IMG/VR virus record: IMGVR_UViG_3300042545_001134
Span: 1-64,000 of that record
Direction: 5' to 3' (one strand)
DNA length: 64,000 nucleotides
The notes beneath the pieces were generated by a model. That model did no database searches. It was not told the DNA's origin and saw only the letters and a list, made by a program, of their open reading frames with translations. Shown in pieces: positions 149 through 64,000 of this stretch. Position 1 is the stretch's first letter. Every line of letters starts with the position of its first letter. The translations under genes were made by a program, and so were the position numbers.

Positions 149-222
149 GGACCCTTAGCTCAGTTGGTTAGAGCAACTGACTCATAATCAGTAGGTCACA
201 GGTTCGAGCCCTGTAGGGTCCA
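149..222 (+). tRNA. tRNA with CAT anticodon, most like tRNA-Ile2 (lysidine type)
   Basis: Acceptor GGACCCT/AGGGTCC, anticodon arm ACTGA-CTCATAA-TCAGT, T-loop GGTTCGAGCC. Confidence 0.9.
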
Positions 223-226
223 CACA

Positions 227-355
227 TGTGGTCGTACACTTAACTCCAATACCCGAAAGGGAAATCGTTATGTGAAGGCCACTCCCCTTGGTAGACCTTA
301 AAAAGGGCCCTTCCGTTGGTACGACAACGGCTCGCTGGGCCCGGGTCTACTTTTT
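227..355 (+). ncRNA. Candidate structured RNA(s) inside the tRNA cluster
   Basis: GC-rich nested stems GTGGTC/GGCCAC, CCC-GAAA-GGG, GTAGACC/GGTCTAC, GGGCCC/GGGCCC, CCGTTG/CAACGG, then a T-run. Confidence 0.45.
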
Positions 356-427
356 GCGAATATCGTATAGTGGTTATTACTCCATCCTTCCAAGTTGGAG
401 ACGACAGTTCGATTCTGTCTATTCGCT
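356..427 (+). tRNA. tRNA-Gly(TCC)
   Basis: Acceptor GCGAATA/TATTCGC, anticodon loop CTTCCAA, T-loop GTTCGATTC. Confidence 0.9.
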
Positions 428-432
428 CATAT

Positions 433-503
433 TATCCTCTCGTCTAATGGCAGGACCTCAGATTTTGATTCTGATTGTCGAGGTTCGAATCCTCGGGGGA
501 TAA
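433..503 (+). tRNA. tRNA-Gln(TTG)
   Basis: Acceptor TATCCTC/GGGGATA, anticodon arm TCAGA-TTTTGAT-TCTGA, T-arm CGAGG-TTCGAAT-CCTCG. Confidence 0.9.
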
Positions 504-516
504 CTAAAAACACAAT

Positions 517-605
517 GGAAGGTTACCCAAGTTGGTGAAGGGGGCAGTTTGCTAAATTGTTAGGGTGTCACAGCCGCGAGGGTTCGAGCCCCTCACCTTC
601 CGCCA
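517..605 (+). tRNA. tRNA-Ser(GCT)
   Basis: Acceptor GGAAGGT/ACCTTCC, loop TTGCTAA, long variable arm, encoded CCA. Confidence 0.92.
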
Positions 606-6450: not shown

Positions 6451-6857
6451 GGGGATGAATGGAATTGATTGGCGTTGGTATTGTACGTGGGCACGTAGTC
6501 GGATGTCATCTACGACTTAAATAAATGGTGGTAACAATTAGACGGCAACGTTTACAACAACATGGAAGTAGCTGGTTTACTAGCAACTTCTAAGGTGGCA
6601 GCCTAACCGCTCCCACTGGACGGGTCGATGGACATATAACCTTGGAACAGAAGTCCTCACGGTGTGGTACCTACCCAAAAAGGTACAAATGGTCTCGTTC
6701 AGAGTGCTACCATAAAAAAAGTGAACTCGACACAGTTTCTGATAACGATGTCAAAATAGGAATCAGATATTTGTCGGTTGTGAATAATCGAATAAACGTG
6801 TAGTCCATTTATGGTATGGCGAACAAGACGAGGGTTCAAATCCCTCCATCTCCACCA
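6451..6857 (+). ncRNA. ssrA: tmRNA; tag (A)GNVYNNMEVAGLLATSKVAA
   Basis: 5' GGGGATGAATGG, 3' T-arm GGTTCAAATCC and acceptor CATCTCCACCA, tag ORF 6544-6606, TACCTTTG promoter upstream. Confidence 0.95.
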
Positions 6858-13588: not shown

Positions 13589-15988
13589 TCACCAAGTAGG
13601 AAGATAAAATTGATTAAAGTGTCTTAAAATTTCATTAGACATATCTATTGAGCGATTATACTGATGTACTATTTTAAATAGTTCACCATTACTATTATAA
13701 ACCACTTTATTTCTACTAATTTGAATATTTCTAAATCTACCCTTATCAATTGGGTCGTTGAATATTGTATGTAAATGCGCCGCCAATGGTACATCTTCTC
13801 TTAATCCCGTTTTTTTCAGTATTTGAGACGCATACATTAGTTTTAAAATTATTGCTTGGTCTACTCCGTAAATTGATTTTGTATGTTCAGGAATTTTACC
13901 ATATTCATCTAAAACAATATCGGCAAATTCGGATAGTGTTTTTCTATTACCCGCAATAACCCCACAGTTTAATACTTCATACGGACCTACTGCATTTGCC
14001 ATATCATTACCATAAACATTTCCAATAACACCATAGTTCCATTTTTGGTCTTGTATCGGAATACCTTCAGATGATATAATAATATTATCCTTAGGTAGTG
14101 TATCTAAAATTTCAAACGGATTCCCTTGGAAATAGATATCACTAAAGTCCACGCACAATATTGTTTCATAATCGTGAGTATTTGCGAATTCTTTAAACGC
14201 AACTAATCTATCTAAAAATAGATTATCATAAACAGGTTCCCTATCTATAATTTCAAAATCAAACGCAGTTAATTCTCGTCTAACCGTTTCGTCTTTTTCT
14301 TTTGATGCGTCGATAACATATAAATCGTAATTATATGACGCAAAATAACTAACACTCTTTATAAATGGGAACTTAATAGATGAGTTAATATCTTTTATGT
14401 AAGTTATTACCACATTTTTATTTTTAACGTTAGTTGGTGCCAAAAATAATGGTTCTATATTATGTTTATAGATATTCTCGTCTATTTTAGTTAATGAATG
14501 GGTTCGACCATAATGGTTGGTGTCGAACATACTATCAACATTTCTATTTGGTGTGGTTCTTAAAATTCGACTACTATTACTATAGTTTACCGCTTGGAAC
14601 TCTCTATTATGATTTTGATACTTTGTATCGTATTCTACTGTATAATCGAGTAATGTCGTCACATCAACTGTTTTGATACCGGATTGGTGTAGTTTTGTGT
14701 TAAGGTCATTATCCTCAGACCCCCAACCCCAAAAACCATTTCTATAACCACCAACCTTAAAGAAATCATTATAATGCATCAATGTACTACCATAATCACC
14801 CATGTTAAAGTACGCCTCGTTTAAATTTGGCCACTTCCACTCACCATCAATAGGATAAACATCAACATGGTGAATATAGAGGAATTTATATTTGTTCTTT
14901 TTTCTAAAGTTAATAACCGAATTACAGGACAATCCGGCATTCCACTCACCAATATTATCTAACTCCGCAATTAAAATATCGTAAGTAATTCCCCTATCTT
15001 TAAAGAATTTTGGGGTTTTAACTAAATAATCTTTTAGATGTTGTTCACGATTTCTGTATGGTACAACGATTAATACGTCCTTTTCTTCTGGTTTATTTAA
15101 TGTTGCGGAACTAAACTCTAAATTATTTAGTATTTCAAATTCATTAAGACTTCTAACGGTACCTAATGGATAATCTGTTTTATATGTTGGGTCAAAATAT
15201 TTTTTTTCTGCATGCTCGTTTGATTTGTTTTCCCTATGCATCGTATTCTGAACTTCGTTGTAGTGTCTTGGTGAACCACCACCAGTGTTATATTTGTGCC
15301 AAATTAAACATTCAGGTGTCCCAAAAAAATCCCACCCATTGGTAAACGCTCTAAGTGTTTGGTCGGTTTCTTCATAGTTCCAATATAACTGTGGGTCATA
15401 TGGTAACTCTTTTACGTATTCAATTGGTGCAAAAACAAATCCAGCAGCGAATGTTGTCCCTAAAATGGGTTTATTATCACCATGGTCTAAATTACATGCA
15501 TTTTTATCGAGACCAAACCCTAAAGAGGTAACGGCCTTTCTATTAAATGCCCTAATTTCATTCTTAATGATGTTACTTTGAGTCTTACCATTTTCATAAT
15601 CAAATGCGGACGGGTAAAATGATAAAACCGGTTTTTTACTATTTGACTCTTTTAAATATTGTATAAATTTATCATCCCAATCCTTACCAAAACGCATGTG
15701 TGCATCAATTTGTAAGTAATATTTTTCTTGTTCAATAAATGTTTGAATTTTGTGTCTAACCCAAGATACCCCTTTAGTATTTTTATAATCTAAAGAGTAA
15801 ATCTCAACCTGTCGATTACCAAAATCCATTTTATAAATCTCATCAGCCTCAAAATCAGTTTGGTTAAATACAACAACCCTTATTCTATCTGGGTCTTTAG
15901 CGTTTTCATATAGGTCATTAATTGTGTTTATTAAGTCAGCATCTCTATAGGATGCAATGCTTACAAAAATTTCACAGTTTTTAATCAT
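13589..15988 (-). CDS. Multi-domain glycosyltransferase (GlcNAc-transferase-like + GT7 galactosyltransferase-like + third GT-A-like domain)
   Basis: IFVSIASYRD/LQIDAHMRF; IVVPYRNRE/GWGSEDNDL; LCVDFSDIYFQGNP/LNCGVIAG. Confidence 0.75.
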   Translation of the reverse strand: MIKNCEIFVSIASYRDADLINTINDLYENAKDPDRIRVVVFNQTDFEADEIYKMDFGNRQVEIYSLDYKNTKGVSWVRHKIQTFIEQEKYYLQIDAHMRFGKDWDDKFIQYLKESNSKKPVLSFYPSAFDYENGKTQSNIIKNEIRAFNRKAVTSLGFGLDKNACNLDHGDNKPILGTTFAAGFVFAPIEYVKELPYDPQLYWNYEETDQTLRAFTNGWDFFGTPECLIWHKYNTGGGSPRHYNEVQNTMHRENKSNEHAEKKYFDPTYKTDYPLGTVRSLNEFEILNNLEFSSATLNKPEEKDVLIVVPYRNREQHLKDYLVKTPKFFKDRGITYDILIAELDNIGEWNAGLSCNSVINFRKKNKYKFLYIHHVDVYPIDGEWKWPNLNEAYFNMGDYGSTLMHYNDFFKVGGYRNGFWGWGSEDNDLNTKLHQSGIKTVDVTTLLDYTVEYDTKYQNHNREFQAVNYSNSSRILRTTPNRNVDSMFDTNHYGRTHSLTKIDENIYKHNIEPLFLAPTNVKNKNVVITYIKDINSSIKFPFIKSVSYFASYNYDLYVIDASKEKDETVRRELTAFDFEIIDREPVYDNLFLDRLVAFKEFANTHDYETILCVDFSDIYFQGNPFEILDTLPKDNIIISSEGIPIQDQKWNYGVIGNVYGNDMANAVGPYEVLNCGVIAGNRKTLSEFADIVLDEYGKIPEHTKSIYGVDQAIILKLMYASQILKKTGLREDVPLAAHLHTIFNDPIDKGRFRNIQISRNKVVYNSNGELFKIVHQYNRSIDMSNEILRHFNQFYLPTW

Positions 15989-59724: not shown

Positions 59725-60465
59725 ATGACACAGAAACTAATAAACCTACTGAATGAGGACGATACTCAAAAGGTAGAACAAATGATACAAGACTTCGAGG
59801 GGTACAACCAAAATGGTATCGAGGTGGTTATGGTGAAGAAAGGTGATAGTGGTGGGGCCATAATGATGATACGGATAACATCCCCAACAATAACAGATGA
59901 TATAGTAAACGAAAAGTTAGAGGTCATCTCAAAGGACTTACAGTCCAAAGGGTATGGTGACCTAATTTTACTTTTCGTAGTTAGTGCCGTATACTATACA
60001 CCTGAAGGTGTGGATTTAAAAATCGATGTGATGAACTATCAACCACACCAAATCAAAAATAACCTGAGATATGAGTACCCTTCAATTCAGGATATACTAA
60101 TGGGTAATGTGGACTTTACTATACAATCCAATGTAATACCTACGGTTAATCAGGACACCGCAGAGTGGATTCGTATTAAGAAGAAGAGATGTATGACAGT
60201 ATATCAGGTACTCCAAAAAGGTTCAGTTAATGGTGTGTCATACACACTAGGTCCCATCCATGGGATGAGTGAGGTGGAACCTACGGTTACTCCGAACTAT
60301 AAAAAGACCTTACAGAGGGACACCATTAATCAACTTCTGTTATCCGTCGAATTAAACGTCCGTATTACAGAGGTCTCCGACCTCAATAGAAAGGACGAAG
60401 TCTCATACGGTATCAAAGAGAAGTTCGAAAAGTTTGGTGTCAACGTGGAAGTCATGGTGAACTAA
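59725..60465 (+). CDS. Hypothetical protein with LLNED leader
   Basis: TATTTATA at 59714 just upstream. Confidence 0.7.
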   Translation: MTQKLINLLNEDDTQKVEQMIQDFEGYNQNGIEVVMVKKGDSGGAIMMIRITSPTITDDIVNEKLEVISKDLQSKGYGDLILLFVVSAVYYTPEGVDLKIDVMNYQPHQIKNNLRYEYPSIQDILMGNVDFTIQSNVIPTVNQDTAEWIRIKKKRCMTVYQVLQKGSVNGVSYTLGPIHGMSEVEPTVTPNYKKTLQRDTINQLLLSVELNVRITEVSDLNRKDEVSYGIKEKFEKFGVNVEVMVN

Positions 60466-60752
60466 AACACATATACATATTTACATATATAGACCCTGTC
60501 ATACGACGGGGTTTTTTATTTTAGGACCGATATAACGATATCCATAGTATACATTTCCAGGAAATTTAAATTTATGTCCTTACTTCACACAAGGTACAAT
60601 CCCAGGGTAAATGTCACTGAGTGGTAAAAAGTGGGGGAAAGTGGCATTGTAATACGCCCAGCCCAAAAACCGGTCATTTTGACCTGACAAAAGTAGGGGA
60701 TTTTCGTTACGACAAAAAATGTCTGGATAGTAGGGTTAAAAACGGGGTTTTT

Positions 60753-61097
60753 TTAGGGGTTATTTTTAGAATCATAAACCAATGGTTCCTCACATACCGG
60801 ACACTCATCCAGTACAATCATATTGTTCCTGCGGAACGACCAACGTTCCACGGTAGGTAATTCATCTACTGTAAGAACCGTATAACCATCCATACATTTT
60901 ACTTCACCATCTATATCATAGTACCTACCTTTATACCTTGTTACTATATGGTTTTTTCTTTGAGAAATATATGGGGTACAATCTTTATACATCTTCTTTA
61001 GTAGGATATGAAACCTATAACATCCTCCTTCGGTATAGATGTATCTTATGTACCCATCTGTATTTCTCAGTTCATCTATGAATGTTAGTATATTCAT
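60753..61097 (-). CDS. Hypothetical protein
   Basis: GGCYRF..YYDIDG; C-terminal CPVC. Confidence 0.75.
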   Translation of the reverse strand: MNILTFIDELRNTDGYIRYIYTEGGCYRFHILLKKMYKDCTPYISQRKNHIVTRYKGRYYDIDGEVKCMDGYTVLTVDELPTVERWSFRRNNMIVLDECPVCEEPLVYDSKNNP

Positions 61098-61118
61098 TTT
61101 ATACTTTATGGTATTATA

Positions 61119-61403
61119 CTATATGGTATTATTGGAATCAACTATCCTTCTATACAATTCATGTTGTAATCTATAAGTCTCTAATCTTTGTTGTTCTTCA
61201 TTAATAGTTATGGTATTATTCTCAATTGGATTGTGTCTTCTTCTATATCGTTCATGACGTATTCTATAACTTTCTTCTTCTGCCTCTATACCATACCTTA
61301 ACGTATCTCTTATTCTTCTTCTTACAGATTCTTCTAATTCATTGGGATATACTTCTATTATACTATTATCAATATATCCCCTGCCAAGTTTAAAATTGTT
61401 CAT
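61119..61403 (-). CDS. Hypothetical protein (MNNFKLGRGY N-terminus)
   Basis: Shares its first 10 aa with the 61413 gene. Confidence 0.6.
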   Translation of the reverse strand: MNNFKLGRGYIDNSIIEVYPNELEESVRRRIRDTLRYGIEAEEESYRIRHERYRRRHNPIENNTITINEEQQRLETYRLQHELYRRIVDSNNTI

Positions 61404-61412
61404 ATATATGGT

Positions 61413-61697
61413 TTAAGACATAAGACTGTCTATTATTTTATCCTGTAATTCAAATATACTATCCATGTTGATATTATCATAATTCAATTCCTCCATAACG
61501 TATTCTGCCCAAACAATATAGTGGGTAAACGTGAGATTATCCTTTATTGATACAATATCCGTGGCAACCCTATTAAACCCCTCATATTTTATCTCAATAC
61601 GGATTGTGGTTTCATCTATATGATATAGTATTATCGATAACCCATATTGGGATATGATTTTGGTATTATATCCCCTGCCAAGTTTAAAGTTGTTCAT
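61413..61697 (-). CDS. Hypothetical protein (MNNFKLGRGY N-terminus)
   Basis: Shares its first 10 aa with the 61119 gene. Confidence 0.6.
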   Translation of the reverse strand: MNNFKLGRGYNTKIISQYGLSIILYHIDETTIRIEIKYEGFNRVATDIVSIKDNLTFTHYIVWAEYVMEELNYDNINMDSIFELQDKIIDSLMS

Positions 61698-61753
61698 ATA
61701 TATGGATTTCTTCAATTTATAGGTTTTAACCCCCTCGATTTTATATCTACACC

Positions 61754-61872
61754 ATAAACAACGTAGAGATACTTATATTATAAAAGTAATCACAGTTGTA
61801 TATACCTTTCAAATTGTGATTATAAACAACTGCAGAACAAATATCAACCTGTGTAGAACAGTTGTATACACC
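61754..61872 (-). CRISPR. Mini-array downstream of cas: half repeat (61861-61872), 30-nt spacer, divergent 36-bp repeat (61795-61830), 32-nt spacer, 9-nt repeat stub
   Basis: Plus strand GTTGTATACACC and GTTGTATATACCTTTCAAATTGTGATTATAAACAAC match the main repeat. Confidence 0.75.
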
Positions 61873-61985
61873 AATAAAAAGTATTTAGTGAGTGGGTTAT
61901 TACCCCGAGATTATCTCCTCCTGTTTATTCAGGGAATCACTATGGGTTGTACAACCAACCCCATCACTTGTGGTGATGAAAATAT
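61873..61985 (-). ncRNA. Guide scaffold copy 1 (omegaRNA/sgRNA-like), overlapping the cas 3' end
   Basis: Homologous to 63751-63868; hairpin GGGTTG-GTTGTA-CAACCC on the minus strand. Confidence 0.7.
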
Positions 61986-63327
61986 CTTGTTTTTTCTGTA
62001 GACCTTTTAATAGTCTACCTTTCTTACTCTTACCTTTTACTTCGTTACCTTCAGCGTAAGTTATATTATATGCCCCAACAATATCGGCATCCTTTAGTTT
62101 ACCGTAATCGTCACACTCAATGTTAATACAGGTGAATTTGGTTTTATCCTTATCCTTTCTATTCTCCTTATCCACATTCTTACAAGTTGGACATGTAATA
62201 GATGTATCTTTTGGATTCACCCACAGGATTTGAATCCCCACCATCTTTGCTTTATATTCAATATCCGTTTGAAGTTGATAATATGCCCACGATTTTAAAA
62301 ACAAATCTTTAGTGTTTGTGGTTATACCAGTTAAGTCCTCCATCTTAATAATACCCACATTGTATTGTTGGGCAATATCAATAACATCCCTACTGATATC
62401 GTGATTCATTAACACGGACCAATTGTGTTCCTTTTCCTTTAATCTTTCCATTCCCAACATCTTTCTTGTTCTTCCATGTCCACCCTTGGCAAACTTCATG
62501 GATTGTTGAAGTGCTCTTCGTATCTTATAGAACTTCATTCTCTCAGTTTGAATCTTTTCACCGATTGAAATCTGTGATGGTTGATGTTTCTCCCCGTCAA
62601 TGTATATTGATACTGGTCTGTTTATACCCAAATCAATTCCCATTACCTTATCAGGAATCATATCCTTTGATTTTGTATCAGGTACTGTACATGTTAATAA
62701 TAAAATAAAATCTTCATCCTTAATTTGAATAGAACTGGTGTTCATTTTGTATTCACCATTCAATATTCTATTGACAATTTTTTCATTACCACTTCTATCC
62801 CTTCCGTAATGTAATTTGAATTTAATTCCTTTGTGAATACTTCTCTCTGATGACGATAATGGTAAGTTAAAAACATAATCCTCCCCTTCTTTACTCACCA
62901 CAGGTTCTTTATTTACCGTACCTTTAAATGGTATTGTTAATGATGTTTTTCTAAATGATGGTATTGACATCTTTCCTTGTAAAATATCATAAAAACTCTC
63001 ATCAATAGTTTTATATATCTTTTGACAAAACGACGATTTTATGTTCGATGATATGATGGTATTTTTCTTCATTAAGTTATAACCCATATTCTCCACCATC
63101 GCCCCGTATTTTTCCTTGAAAATCTCTTTTGATTTAACTTTAGTAATATTAGTTGAATTTTTTATCTCATCCAACTCGTACTGGTTACAAACAGTTAACC
63201 TAATAACTTCGTTTCCAATTTGAACCAAGTCAGATGCAATTCTTTTTACGTAATTGTACGATGCAGTTCTGTCCTTGCTGGTTTCACCAACCGCAATCAA
63301 TTTGATTTTTCTTGTGATTATTGACAT
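61900..63327 (-). CDS. cas12f: Compact type V effector, Cas12f (Cas14)/TnpB-derived RNA-guided nuclease, 475 aa
   Basis: RuvC-I VMGIDLG, GGHGRTRK, RuvC-II KMEDL, W.YYQLQ..IEYKA, Zn finger CPTC..C...EC, RuvC-III DADIVGAYNI; adjacent array. Confidence 0.85.
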   Translation of the reverse strand: MSIITRKIKLIAVGETSKDRTASYNYVKRIASDLVQIGNEVIRLTVCNQYELDEIKNSTNITKVKSKEIFKEKYGAMVENMGYNLMKKNTIISSNIKSSFCQKIYKTIDESFYDILQGKMSIPSFRKTSLTIPFKGTVNKEPVVSKEGEDYVFNLPLSSSERSIHKGIKFKLHYGRDRSGNEKIVNRILNGEYKMNTSSIQIKDEDFILLLTCTVPDTKSKDMIPDKVMGIDLGINRPVSIYIDGEKHQPSQISIGEKIQTERMKFYKIRRALQQSMKFAKGGHGRTRKMLGMERLKEKEHNWSVLMNHDISRDVIDIAQQYNVGIIKMEDLTGITTNTKDLFLKSWAYYQLQTDIEYKAKMVGIQILWVNPKDTSITCPTCKNVDKENRKDKDKTKFTCINIECDDYGKLKDADIVGAYNITYAEGNEVKGKSKKGRLLKGLQKKQDIFITTSDGVGCTTHSDSLNKQEEIISG

Positions 63328-63351
63328 ATCATGTTCTATTTTATGTTCATC

Positions 63352-63692
63352 GTTATATTAAAAACTTCAAGTAAGAGGTATTTACAACATAAATCCCATT
63401 AGTTCGTATGGGTTCGTAGTTGTATACACCTTTCAAATAAGAGGTATTTACAACGTACTTGATGACCTGCAACAGGTCCATCAGTTGTATACACCTTTCA
63501 AATAAGAGAAACCCAAAGTACATGTTGTATACACCTTTCAAATAAGAGGTATTTACAACGTTTTCTCTTTCCCATGAGGTGCATCACCTGTTGTATACAC
63601 CTTTCAAATAAGAGGCATTTACAACTATTAACGGATGTACCAAAAATTAACATATAGTTGTATACACCTTTCAAATAAGAGGCATTTACAAC
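63352..63692 (-). CRISPR. CRISPR array, 36-bp repeat GTTGTAAATACCTCTTATTTGAAAGGTGTATACAAC (minus strand), 6 repeat units, 29-31-nt spacers
   Basis: Plus-strand repeats at 63352 (degenerate), 63419, 63484 (truncated to 25 bp), 63524, 63590, 63657. Confidence 0.95.
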
Positions 63693-63750
63693 ATGGTTAA
63701 CCCCATCTTATTATGAATCAACATATTGTGAATGATTCCCTTATTAAAAA

Positions 63751-63895
63751 ATAAAAGGTATTTAGTGAGTGAGAAGTTAATCTCCAGAAAAATTCCATCC
63801 TGTTTATTCAGGATTCACTATGGGCTGTACAACCAGCCCCACCAAAGTTTTACCTCTGATGAAAATATATTGAAGTTTCCAATATTTCAAAGAAC
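63751..63895 (-). ncRNA. tracrRNA-like scaffold copy 2
   Basis: Hairpin GGGCTG-GTTGTA-CAGCCC with loop complementary to the repeat 3' end; anti-repeat TAAATACCTTTT. Confidence 0.75.
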
Positions 63896-63899
63896 AATA

Positions 63900-63930
63900 C
63901 AAAGATACGTGTATTTTTTAGATATCCAAA
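63900..63930 (-). promoter_or_regulatory. Bacteroidota sigma70 promoter driving tracr-array-cas
   Basis: Minus strand TTTG-N19-TATCTTTG. Confidence 0.8.
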
Positions 63931-64000
63931 TTTTTTTTTAAAAATATTTTTTTATTCATCATCCTCCAACGAATCACTGTATGTGGGTTTATCCTTTGGG

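What the first reader, a model, noticed from the sequence alone, without database searches (positions are those of the whole stretch)
61795..61985. Naturally fused single-guide RNA at the cas 3' end
Seen: on the minus strand scaffold 1 runs directly into CTAAATAC-TTTTTATTG-GTGTATACAAC and then a 30-nt spacer (61860-61831). The anti-repeat and the last 12 nt of the repeat are thus joined by a short loop, as in engineered sgRNAs. A divergent full repeat follows and could set the 3' end. Scaffold 2 may be similarly fused in degenerate form (CCTTTTATT-TTTT-AATAAGGG...CACAAT, then about 30 nt at 63722-63693). Inference: arrays here grew by adding repeats behind a scaffold-spacer unit.
Basis: partly seen in the sequence, partly recalled or inferred. 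Interest (0 to 1): 0.8.

Follow-up and report, generated by a model that had tools for sequence, protein, structure and literature searches.

The report
Natural single-guide RNA in phage Cas12f
A lake-water giant phage carries a miniature CRISPR nuclease (Cas12f type) whose helper-RNA gene is joined directly to half a CRISPR repeat and a spacer, a natural counterpart of the single-guide RNAs engineers build; related phages have the same join, but the RNA has not yet been seen.

Summary
All features lie on the minus strand. A 98-nt structured scaffold (61978-61881) overlaps the last codons of a 475-aa Cas12f1/V-U3-type gene. A 9-nt loop joins it to the last 11-12 nt of a CRISPR repeat (61872-61861). 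A 30-nt spacer (61860-61831) and a full repeat (61830-61795) follow.

A second scaffold copy (63861-63748) heads the main array upstream of cas.

- The scaffold is a real RNA element: 13 of 19 predicted pairs show compensatory changes across 25 copies.
- It has the same layout as the engineered sgRNA of the closest solved relative, Al3Cas12f.
- The fusion is not an artefact. At least nine lake metagenome runs hold the stretch, and 17 of the 31 scaffolds catalogued in relatives (34-95% protein identity) are fused in the same way.
- The fused spacers differ between relatives.
- Scaffold 1 is the most conserved part of the cas unit.

Expression of the fused RNA is not shown. A metatranscriptome contig covers only scaffold 2.

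The idea that arrays grew behind a scaffold-spacer unit is unresolved. Short deletions clearly convert one form into another.

Verdict: a new variant of a known kind. It lies between the TnpB omega RNA and the split tracrRNA/crRNA, with published conceptual precedents.

The parts
63900..63907 (-). Candidate Bacteroidota-type -7 promoter box (TATCTTTG) upstream of scaffold 2
   Evidence: Seen by eye only; the consensus TAnnTTTG is from my own knowledge. The RNA-library contig of X19 starts at 63875, downstream of it. The sigma-70 scan is at chance level. Weak.
63748..63861 (-). Scaffold 2 (tracrRNA-like): stem 0, hairpin 1 with loop GTTGTA (63833-63828), a junction closed by AGTGA/TCACT, and the anti-repeat AAATACCTTTT (63763-63753)
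   Evidence: Covariance model hit E 7e-19. Fold z-score -3.8. Covariation in the alignment. A 166-nt contig from RNA run X19 covers 63710-63875 and nothing else in 2.4 kb.
63725..63747 (-). 3' arm of scaffold 2's own hairpin (the hairpin spans 63758-63738, so its 5' arm lies in the scaffold 2 part), then a relic of a repeat end (CACAAT, 63730-63725)
   Evidence: Relatives L004 and L006 have TTCACAAC at the same place.
63693..63724 (-). Conserved 32-nt leader or fixed pseudo-guide between scaffold 2 and repeat 1
   Evidence: Identical in L162 and differing by one base and a one-base gap in L001, while the array spacers all differ. The RNA contig extends 15 nt into it. No second copy in the window.
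63353..63692 (-). Main CRISPR array: 36-nt repeats, spacers of 29-31 nt, one internally deleted unit (63523-63484), and a degenerate terminal repeat (63388-63353) abutting the cas start
   Evidence: RNA run X20 has a contig with a different first spacer.
61900..63327 (-). cas12f-type effector gene, 475 aa (V-F1/V-U3-like); its last ~25 codons overlap scaffold 1
   Evidence: PADLOC Cas12u3 9e-82 and Cas12f 1e-80, full length. NCBIfam guided_TnpB 5e-43. Pfam Cas12f1-like_TNB. PDB Al3Cas12f 9NZO 1e-48. Candidate RuvC acidic residues (D232, E330, D413/D415) and four zinc-ribbon cysteines are invariant in 32 relatives.
61881..61978 (-). Scaffold 1: stem 0 (61978-61962), hairpin 1 (61961-61944, loop GTTGTA 61955-61950), a three-hairpin junction closed by AGTGA/TCACT, and the anti-repeat AAATAC (61886-61881)
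   Evidence: Covariance model hit E 5e-16; fold. It is 91-95% identical to phages whose cas coding sequence is 74-79% identical. Compensatory changes occur among scaffold 1 copies.
61872..61880 (-). 9-nt loop (TTTTTATTG) joining the anti-repeat to the half repeat
61861..61871 (-). 3' half of a repeat (GTGTATACAAC). Its start pairs with the anti-repeat; its last 6 nt are complementary to the loop of hairpin 1 (a pseudoknot)
   Evidence: Loop and repeat end are complementary at 161 of 174 positions over 29 scaffolds as scripted. That becomes 171 of 174 after I corrected by hand a one-base offset in the two L007 rows. Sliding the partner gives 37-108 of 174.
61831..61860 (-). 30-nt spacer fused behind the scaffold (the putative guide)
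   Evidence: Unique in the window, and its first 20 nt are unique in IMG/VR. Relatives L162, L001, L082 and L083 each have a different sequence at this position.
61795..61830 (-). Full 36-nt repeat of the second subtype, closing the mini-array
   Evidence: It differs at 3 positions from the array repeat of L082 and L164.

Best explanation
The window holds a phage-borne type V-F1 (V-U3-like) CRISPR-Cas12f locus with no adaptation genes next to it (the rest of the phage genome was not screened). It has two guide modules, and both lie in the same orientation as cas.

Each module begins with a structured tracrRNA-like scaffold of about 100-115 nt that is physically continuous with its array.

In the module at the cas 3' end, the anti-repeat of the scaffold is joined by a 9-nt loop to the last 11-12 nt of a repeat. 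A 30-nt spacer follows directly. One transcript would therefore contain everything an engineered Cas12f sgRNA contains:
- the scaffold;
- an intramolecular anti-repeat:repeat hairpin;
- the 6-nt repeat end that pairs with the loop of hairpin 1;
- the guide.

It would most likely be made as the 3' part of the cas transcript, as the TnpB omega RNA is. The following repeat would give the downstream boundary. Cas12f would load it without any tracrRNA:crRNA annealing or processing step and cut DNA matching the spacer.

The upstream scaffold is the split version. It has an anti-repeat that can pair in trans with the repeats of the main array.

Shown: the DNA anatomy, RNA-level selection on the scaffold, recurrence of the fusion in relatives, spacer diversity, and expression of scaffold 2 in lake samples.

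Inferred: transcription of scaffold 1, survival of the join, loading into the protein, and cleavage.
For: - **Effector.** Full-length matches to Cas12u3/Cas12f profiles; closest solved structure Al3Cas12f; conserved acidic residues and zinc ribbon.
- **Scaffold structure.** 19 predicted pairs, 13 with compensatory changes, across 25 scaffolds.
- **Pseudoknot.** Loop and repeat end are complementary at 161/174 positions as scripted, 171/174 after my hand correction of two L007 rows. They covary: GTTGTG with CACAAC in L007 and L090, GTTGTT with AACAAC in L091.
- **Match to an engineered sgRNA.** The Al3Cas12f sgRNA has the same order of elements: hairpin loop GUUGGA complementary to the repeat end UCCAAC, a CACUCAA closure, the anti-repeat, a GAAA loop, then the repeat 3' part.
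- **Recurrence.** 17 of the 31 scaffolds catalogued in relatives carry a half repeat 26-49 nt after the anti-repeat start, followed by a spacer. In 15 of these 17 the join folds as an anti-repeat:repeat hairpin that leaves the last 7 nt free.
- **Different guides.** The five scaffold 1 copies with the 26-nt join (window, L162, L001, L082, L083) carry five different spacers.
- **Conservation.** Scaffold 1 is 91-95% identical where the cas coding sequence is 74-79% identical. Identity ends at the junction. Within the coding overlap, paired substitutions keep the stem while changing two amino acids.
- **Not an artefact.** At least nine DNA runs hold the whole stretch.
Against: - No RNA evidence for scaffold 1. 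In RNA run X19 the contig covers scaffold 2 only, at depth about 7, with depth 0 over scaffold 1 and cas.
- The intramolecular hairpin in the window is short (5 pairs, -2.1 kcal/mol, no better than shuffles).
- No protospacer was found for the fused spacer, so no PAM or target is known.
- One close relative (L165) has lost the whole downstream module, and L001 has lost the following repeat. The module is therefore dispensable in some lineages.
- No promoter or terminator could be assigned.
Confidence: 0.55

Rival explanations
1. Scaffold 1 works only as a tracrRNA, a second copy. The half repeat and spacer behind it are just the first, partly deleted unit of a small array. The transcript is cut between scaffold and half repeat, or the cis hairpin is displaced, so no single-guide RNA persists.
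For: - The anti-repeat of scaffold 1 can still pair with main-array repeats.
- Half-repeat units produced by deletion also occur inside arrays, away from any scaffold: window 63523-63484, and L001, L162 and L086.
- Four scaffolds are followed by a near-full repeat only 7 nt away.
- The state changes often on the tree.
Against: - 15 of 17 joins keep a hairpin between anti-repeat and half repeat and keep the 6-nt pseudoknot partner in register.
- The 26-nt join is retained in five lineages spanning 75-95% protein identity.
- The engineered equivalent of this join is active in the nearest characterised relative (PMC13186708).
Confidence: 0.22
2. The downstream module is a decaying duplicate that is no longer expressed or used. 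Only the upstream scaffold and array are functional.
For: No RNA coverage in X19, while scaffold 2 is covered. L165 lacks the module, and L001 lacks the closing repeat. The window hairpin is weak.
Against: Scaffold 1 is the best-conserved 118 nt of the cas unit. It shows compensatory substitutions that cost amino-acid changes. Spacer content differs even in the 95%-identical relative L162, which argues for turnover rather than a frozen relic.
Confidence: 0.12
3. The fused RNA is a regulator, not an immune guide. Like the long tracrRNA of Cas9 or the repeat-like 'cr-like' RNAs, it would direct binding without cleavage to a partly matching site in the phage or the host.
For: There are precedents for natural single guides with a regulatory role: Cas9 tracr-L and phage vsgRNAs (bioRxiv 10.64898/2026.06.01.729453), and standalone-repeat cr-like RNAs (bioRxiv 10.1101/2023.03.03.530964, abstract only, listed). 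The 32 nt after scaffold 2 are conserved between phages and present in RNA.
Against: The first 14 nt of the fused spacer have no other match, even with up to 2 mismatches, in the 64-kb window; the pseudo-guide has only a chance-level one. The fused spacer differs in every relative, unlike a regulator with a fixed target.
Confidence: 0.07
4. The unit is a TnpB-type transposon end: an omega RNA whose 'guide' is simply the DNA flanking the element.
For: The scaffold overlaps the 3' end of the gene and the guide follows directly, as in IS200/IS605 TnpB. PHROGs and some sources label the protein a transposase.
Against: - No TnpA or other transposase is nearby.
- The window has only two scaffold copies, both in this locus.
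- The 30 nt are followed by a CRISPR repeat.
- In L162 the downstream flank is homologous to window sequence, yet the spacer is different.
- The locus keeps the same order (scaffold, array, cas, scaffold) in the related phages.
Confidence: 0.03

Closest known systems
Engineered Cas12f sgRNAs (Al3Cas12f sgRNA1, AsCas12f; PMC13186708)
   Same: Same order of elements: 5' hairpin, a hairpin whose 6-nt loop is complementary to the last 6 nt of the repeat, a closure of the CACUCA type, anti-repeat, short loop, 3' part of the repeat, guide. The protein is related at E 1e-48.
   Different: Here the join is encoded in the genome, with a 9-nt U-rich loop instead of GAAA. The anti-repeat:repeat stem is about 5 pairs, against about 10.
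TnpB omega RNA / reRNA (IS200/IS605 OMEGA systems)
   Same: A single RNA that overlaps the 3' end of the nuclease gene and carries the guide at its 3' end.
   Different: There is no transposon context. The guide is spacer-like, variable between relatives, and followed by a CRISPR repeat. A split tracrRNA plus array coexists in the same locus.
TranC, transposon-CRISPR intermediates (Jin et al., Cell 2025, doi 10.1016/j.cell.2025.09.004; known to me only through citing papers, and my memory of the abstract)
   Same: The idea that the unsplit guide RNA and the split tracrRNA/crRNA are two states of one RNA, and that one effector can use both.
   Different: This protein falls in the established V-F1/V-U3 group, not in a new clade. 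The unsplit RNA here heads a CRISPR array rather than a transposon end. I could not read the paper, so overlap with its data cannot be excluded.
Re-emerged omega RNA in RpoE-linked inactivated TnpB derived from Cas12f (Altae-Tran et al., PNAS 2023, PMC10691335)
   Same: The published scenario matches: the array is minimised, a half repeat lies next to the tracrRNA, and the two fuse while keeping the 3' end of the repeat.
   Different: In that case the nuclease is inactive and the array is lost. Here the candidate catalytic residues are kept, arrays persist, spacers turn over, and the carrier is a phage.
Natural single guides of Cas9: long tracrRNA (tracr-L) and phage vsgRNAs (bioRxiv 10.64898/2026.06.01.729453)
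   Same: Genome-encoded fusion of tracrRNA-like and crRNA-like parts; phage-borne in the vsgRNA case.
   Different: Those are type II, with a different fold, and the guide sits at the 5' end. Their role is repression or sequestration of a host Cas9, not supply of a guide to the phage's own nuclease.

Membership tests
Type V-F1 (V-U3) CRISPR-Cas12f | Small TnpB-like effector (about 400-700 aa) matching Cas12f/V-U3 profiles over its full length | tested here: met
   PADLOC Cas12u3 9.3e-82 (profile 2-390 of 398) and Cas12f 1.4e-80. PDB Cas12f entries 1e-48 to 1e-29. The NCBIfam Cas12f2 model is below its cut-off, so the protein is not the f2 subgroup.
Type V-F1 (V-U3) CRISPR-Cas12f | Intact RuvC acidic residues and a zinc ribbon | tested here: met
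   D232, E330, D413/D415 and C379, C382, C400, C405 are invariant in 32 relatives. The first two motifs align with Al3Cas12f. Their assignment as catalytic rests on motif position, not on an assay.
Type V-F1 (V-U3) CRISPR-Cas12f | Adjacent CRISPR array, usually without cas1/cas2/cas4 | tested here: met
   Arrays lie on both sides of cas. No adaptation gene was seen among the neighbours or the large ORFs that were scanned. The whole 310-kb genome was not scanned.
Type V-F1 (V-U3) CRISPR-Cas12f | A tracrRNA with an anti-repeat that pairs with the repeat | tested here: met
   AAAUACCUUU pairs with AAAGGUGUAU. This covaries in L165 (AAAUUCUUC with GAAGGGUUU), read by eye. Scaffold covariation. Layout as in the Al3Cas12f sgRNA.
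Type V-F1 (V-U3) CRISPR-Cas12f | Dimeric effector on one guide; PAM-dependent cutting of double-stranded DNA | not testable with these tools
   Needs biochemistry. No protospacer was found from which a PAM could be inferred.
TnpB / omega RNA (OMEGA, IS200/IS605) | Guide RNA overlapping the 3' end of the gene, with the guide attached directly | tested here: met
   Scaffold 1 (61978-61881) overlaps the gene end at 61900, and the spacer follows at 61860.
TnpB / omega RNA (OMEGA, IS200/IS605) | Transposon context: TnpA or transposon ends, several copies, guide equal to the flanking DNA | tested here: not met
   No transposase nearby. Only this locus carries scaffolds. The guide is followed by a CRISPR repeat and differs in L162 although the flank is homologous.
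TranC (transposon-CRISPR intermediate) | One effector uses both an unsplit right-end-type RNA and CRISPR RNAs with a tracrRNA | tested here: inconclusive
   Both RNA forms are encoded in the locus. Their use by the protein cannot be tested here, and the defining paper could not be read.
Natural single-guide RNAs of Cas9 (tracr-L, vsgRNA) | Cas9-type scaffold, 5' guide, regulatory or anti-defence role | tested here: not met
   No Rfam family matched. The scaffold is of the Cas12f type with a 3' guide.

The most novel reading that the evidence does not exclude
In this clade of giant-phage Cas12f systems, the guide RNA would exist in the same locus in two forms: unsplit (omega-RNA-like, scaffold joined to guide) and split (tracrRNA plus crRNAs). 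The scaffold itself serves as the head of the array, and short deletions and spacer gain convert one form into the other within closely related phages. This would be a living, still-active example of the omega RNA to tracrRNA/crRNA transition. It also implies that only the 3' 12-17 nt of the repeat are needed for function, as the arrays of L191 and L087, built from mini repeats alone, suggest. A further possibility is that scaffold 2 with its conserved 32-nt tail is itself a fixed single guide against a conserved target.
Probability: 0.3. Interest if true: 0.8.

Novelty: new variant of a known kind. Interest (0 to 1): 0.62.

Why it matters
How one-piece transposon guide RNAs became the two-piece tracrRNA/crRNA of type V CRISPR systems is an active question. 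Here one locus, and a whole family of phage loci, encodes both forms side by side for a nuclease that looks active, so the two can be compared directly with one protein. If the fused RNA works, three things follow:
- Single-guide RNAs are not only an engineering device or a transposon legacy; a CRISPR system can also use them.
- Phages would have a guide that needs no host processing.
- The family offers a panel of naturally tested, very short joins and minimal repeats for designing compact Cas12f guides.

Tried and rejected
- **Rfam:** scan of 60000-64000 at permissive threshold gave only sub-threshold chance hits.
- **Promoters and terminators:** sigma-70 promoter-like sites were at chance level. 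The terminator-like hits lie in stems of the scaffold or inside an array spacer. The likely host uses another promoter type.
- **Targets of the fused spacer:** no other copy of its first 14-20 nt in the window, even with 2-3 mismatches. No exact match to its first 20 nt in IMG/VR except itself. No significant hit of the whole locus in GenBank phages.
- **Self or regulatory targets of the conserved 32 nt after scaffold 2:** none beyond chance in the window.
- **Transposon reading:** rejected; see rivals.
- **'Cas12 hacker' (Cas12p) phage nuclease:** a different family, 500-700 aa with a GTN PAM.
- **Motif scan of IMG/VR with a scaffold pattern:** one new locus (L170) among mostly chance hits.
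- **TranC paper:** not held by the library.
- **Automatic detection of the first repeat end:** failed for several loci. Junction distances were then curated by eye and checked by folding. The L007 offsets are off by one base.

Full report
**What is there**

The window is part of IMG/VR contig 3300042545_001134, 310.7 kb. It is held by many lake-water metagenome runs. It carries a tRNA cluster and a tmRNA, and almost all of its large ORFs have no Pfam match. This fits a giant phage. A 248-kb contig with a related locus is binned as Flavobacteriaceae, which suggests a Bacteroidota host.

Read on the minus strand from 63907 to 61795, the locus contains, in order:
- a tracrRNA-like scaffold (scaffold 2, 63861-63748);
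- a small hairpin and the relic CACAAT;
- a 32-nt stretch (63724-63693);
- a CRISPR array of 36-nt repeats (63692-63353), with one internally deleted unit and a degenerate last repeat;
- a 475-aa gene (63327-61900);
- a second scaffold (scaffold 1, 61978-61881) that overlaps the last ~25 codons of that gene;
- a 9-nt loop;
- the last 11-12 nt of a repeat (61872-61861);
- a 30-nt spacer (61860-61831);
- a full repeat of a second subtype (61830-61795).

**The protein**

It matches the PADLOC Cas12u3 and Cas12f profiles over their full length, at 9e-82 and 1e-80. It also matches NCBIfam guided_TnpB and Pfam Cas12f1-like_TNB.

Its closest solved relative is Al3Cas12f from Alistipes (9NZO/9NZR, 1e-48), followed by AsCas12f.

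The candidate RuvC acidic residues and the four zinc-ribbon cysteines are invariant in 32 relatives. I therefore read it as an active nuclease of the V-F1/V-U3 group.

The family is large: 558 proteins at E below 1e-10, many on contigs of 250-340 kb.

**The scaffold is a real RNA element**

Twenty-five non-identical scaffolds from relatives align without difficulty. RNAalifold predicts 19 pairs, and 13 of them show changes on both sides that keep the pair. The predicted elements are:
- a first hairpin;
- a closing helix, AGUGA/UCACU, which switches to GGUGA/UCACC in nine sequences;
- an internal hairpin, CCUG/CAGG, with many pair types.

By eye, a further hairpin lies 5' of the modelled region in all lineages. 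Its sequences are unrelated but its shape is kept. In scaffold 1 it is CAUCAC/GUGAUG (61978-61962).

A covariance model built from the alignment finds exactly two copies in the window and 31 in relatives.

The 6-nt loop of the first hairpin is complementary to the last 6 nt of the repeat. A script counted 161 of 174 positions over 29 scaffolds. That becomes 171 of 174 after I corrected by hand a one-base offset in the two L007 rows. Sliding the partner by 1-3 nt gives 37-108 of 174.

Loop and repeat end covary:
- GTTGTA with TACAAC in most;
- GTTGTG with CACAAC in L007 and L090;
- GTTGTT with AACAAC in L091.

**Comparison with a characterised relative**

The supplementary table of the Al3Cas12f paper gives its engineered sgRNA. 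It has these elements in order:
- a 5' hairpin;
- a hairpin whose loop, GUUGGA, is complementary to the repeat end UCCAAC;
- a closure ending in CACUCAA;
- an anti-repeat;
- the artificial GAAA loop;
- the 3' part of the repeat;
- the spacer.

Scaffold 1 of the window has the same order of elements, with UUUUUAUUG in place of GAAA.

In the split form, the anti-repeat of scaffold 2 (AAAUACCUUU) can pair with AAAGGUGUAU of the main-array repeat. In L165 both sides have changed together (AAAUUCUUC with GAAGGGUUU).

**The fusion recurs**

In L001, which shares 76% protein identity, the same two-module layout exists. There scaffold 1 runs into TTTTCAAAGGTGTATACAAC and then unrelated sequence.

I catalogued 31 scaffolds in relatives sharing 34-95% protein identity:
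- 17 carry a half repeat 26-49 nt after the start of the anti-repeat, followed by a spacer and usually by full repeats. The window's scaffold 1 is one more of this kind. L011, which has a short or degenerate unit, might also be counted.
- 4 have a nearly full repeat 7 nt after the scaffold.
- 9 have a longer leader. Scaffold 2 of the window is of this kind.

In 15 of the 17 fused units, the minimum-energy fold is a hairpin between anti-repeat and half repeat that leaves the last 7 nt free.

The 26-nt join of the window is shared by L162, L001, L082 and L083. Each of these has a different spacer behind it.

**Scaffold 1 is under selection of its own**

Between the window and L001, L083 and L082, the cas coding sequence is 74-79% identical, but the 118 nt of scaffold 1 are 91-95% identical. 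That is higher than or equal to any 60-nt window of the gene. Identity ends at the junction with the spacer.

Within the part that overlaps the coding sequence, L082 and L164 carry a paired T-to-C and A-to-G change. It keeps the first stem while changing two amino acids. L001 and L083 carry a paired G-to-A and C-to-T change in the third small hairpin.

More distant relatives end the gene 50-110 nt before the scaffold. The overlap in the window clade therefore looks like a read-through extension of the ORF into an RNA gene.

**RNA evidence**

Only one read-laying run was allowed.

- In metatranscriptome run X19, the only contig on the 2.4-kb stretch is a perfect 166-nt piece, 63710-63875. It covers scaffold 2 with 14 nt upstream of stem 0 and runs 15 nt past CACAAT. 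It ends 18 nt before the first repeat, so the repeats did not cause the break.
- This supports a discrete, abundant small RNA from scaffold 2 that continues into the conserved 32 nt. DNA carry-over is unlikely, because only 166 nt are covered.
- Scaffold 1 and cas have no coverage in that run.
- Run X20 has a contig joining scaffold 2, the leader, repeat 1, a different 29-nt spacer and a repeat. This points to spacer turnover at the scaffold-proximal end.

The central claim, an uncut scaffold-spacer RNA at the cas 3' end, therefore remains untested at the RNA level.

**How it most likely works**

I commit to the single-guide reading (confidence 0.55):
- The module is transcribed with, or behind, cas.
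- It folds into the Cas12f scaffold, with a cis anti-repeat:repeat hairpin and the pseudoknot.
- It presents the 30-nt spacer as guide with no need for annealing or processing.
- The following repeat marks the downstream boundary.

The phage's own spacer DNA would be spared, as in any array, because the repeat end, not a PAM, precedes it. This last point is an inference from general CRISPR knowledge.

The upstream module supplies the same scaffold in split form for the main array.

The rivals are:
- a tracrRNA that is cut from its first unit (0.22);
- a decaying duplicate (0.12);
- a regulatory guide (0.07);
- a transposon end (0.03). This one fails because there is no transposase, there are no extra copies, and the guide is followed by a repeat and differs where the flank is homologous.

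**Evolutionary inference**

On a protein tree of 26 loci, the fused state occurs in every major clade. It needs 7 changes, no fewer than shuffled labels. It could be ancestral with repeated loss, or it could be gained repeatedly.

Within the window clade, the 26-nt join is the shared state. The longer first unit of L164 looks derived from it by loss of the first spacer.

Deleted units that keep only the 3' part of a repeat are common inside arrays. In L191 and L087 the arrays consist only of 14-17-nt mini repeats.

The picture is frequent interconversion, not a simple one-way growth of arrays behind a scaffold-spacer unit.

**What is known already**

Four related ideas are published:
- Altae-Tran et al. 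2023 proposed that a half repeat and the tracrRNA fused to re-create an omega RNA in inactivated TnpB derived from Cas12f.
- Jin et al. 2025 described TranC effectors in which the one-piece RNA is split into tracrRNA and crRNA. I could not read that paper.
- Natural single guides are known for Cas9.
- Repeat-like RNAs near cas genes have been described (listed; I read only the abstract).

In the searchable literature I found no description of a Cas12f family in which the scaffold heads the array and is fused to the first guide. I rate the finding a new variant of a known kind.

Noticed in passing
window 63484-63523 (minus): One unit of the main array is internally deleted. A 15-nt spacer stub runs straight into the last 25 nt of a repeat. 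Similar half-repeat units occur inside arrays of L001, L162, L083, L086, L004 and L088. This suggests that only the 3' part of the repeat is needed for guide function.
   Followed up: partly
window 63657-63692 versus 61795-61830 (minus): One locus uses two repeat subtypes that share only their 3' ~19 nt. The subtype at the cas 3' end is the main repeat of relatives L082, L164, L009 and L088.
   Followed up: partly
L191 2296-2600 and 3854-4150; L087 3860-4000: On both sides of cas, the arrays are built only from 14-17-nt mini repeats (ending ATAGTATATACAAC) with spacers of 20-43 nt, each array headed by a fused scaffold. L191 is a 248-kb contig binned as a Flavobacteriaceae MAG and is probably another giant phage.
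   Followed up: partly
window 63693-63724 (minus): The 32 nt between scaffold 2 and repeat 1 are identical in L162, differ by one base and a one-base gap in L001, and are partly kept in L165. The RNA contig of run X19 runs 15 nt into them. They could be a leader needed for spacer integration, or a fixed guide. No target was found in the window.
   Followed up: partly
window 63419-63847 (RNA run X20, contig 19): A 2017 freshwater metatranscriptome holds scaffold 2, the leader and repeat 1, followed by a different 29-nt spacer. This indicates spacer turnover at the scaffold-proximal end, although no cas1/cas2 was seen near the locus.
   Followed up: no
window 61900-61978 (minus): The cas ORF of this clade (474-476 aa) reads through scaffold 1. 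L165 (458 aa) lacks the scaffold, and more distant relatives stop 50-110 nt before it. Paired substitutions in the overlap keep RNA stems at the cost of amino-acid changes.
   Followed up: yes
window 149-605 and 6451-6857 (plus): A cluster of four tRNA genes (Met, Gly, Gln, Ser) and a tmRNA gene with tag peptide GNVYNNMEVAGLLATSKVAA, on a phage contig.
   Followed up: no
window 61119-61715 (minus): Two paralogous small ORFs (100 and 94 aa) have nearly identical 5' ends. DNA runs X10 and X18 contain a rearranged form here (joint 61705 to 61600 with 188 other letters).
   Followed up: no
window 63353-63692 and arrays of relatives: The repeats are 36 bp and begin GTTGT. PMC8092290 reports 36-bp repeats with a shared GTTGT end for Flavobacterium columnare II-C and VI-B arrays, which share one Cas1-Cas2. 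The phage arrays may use host adaptation proteins in trans. This is an idea only and was not tested.
   Followed up: no
L007, L082, L083, L088, L164, L191: A two-module layout, with a scaffold-headed array on each side of cas or two in tandem, recurs in several clades. The window's layout is therefore typical of the family rather than a one-off duplication.
   Followed up: partly
window 13592-15988 (minus): A 799-aa ORF with GlcNAc-transferase and galactosyltransferase-family domains. It was the only one of ten large ORFs tested that had a Pfam match.
   Followed up: no
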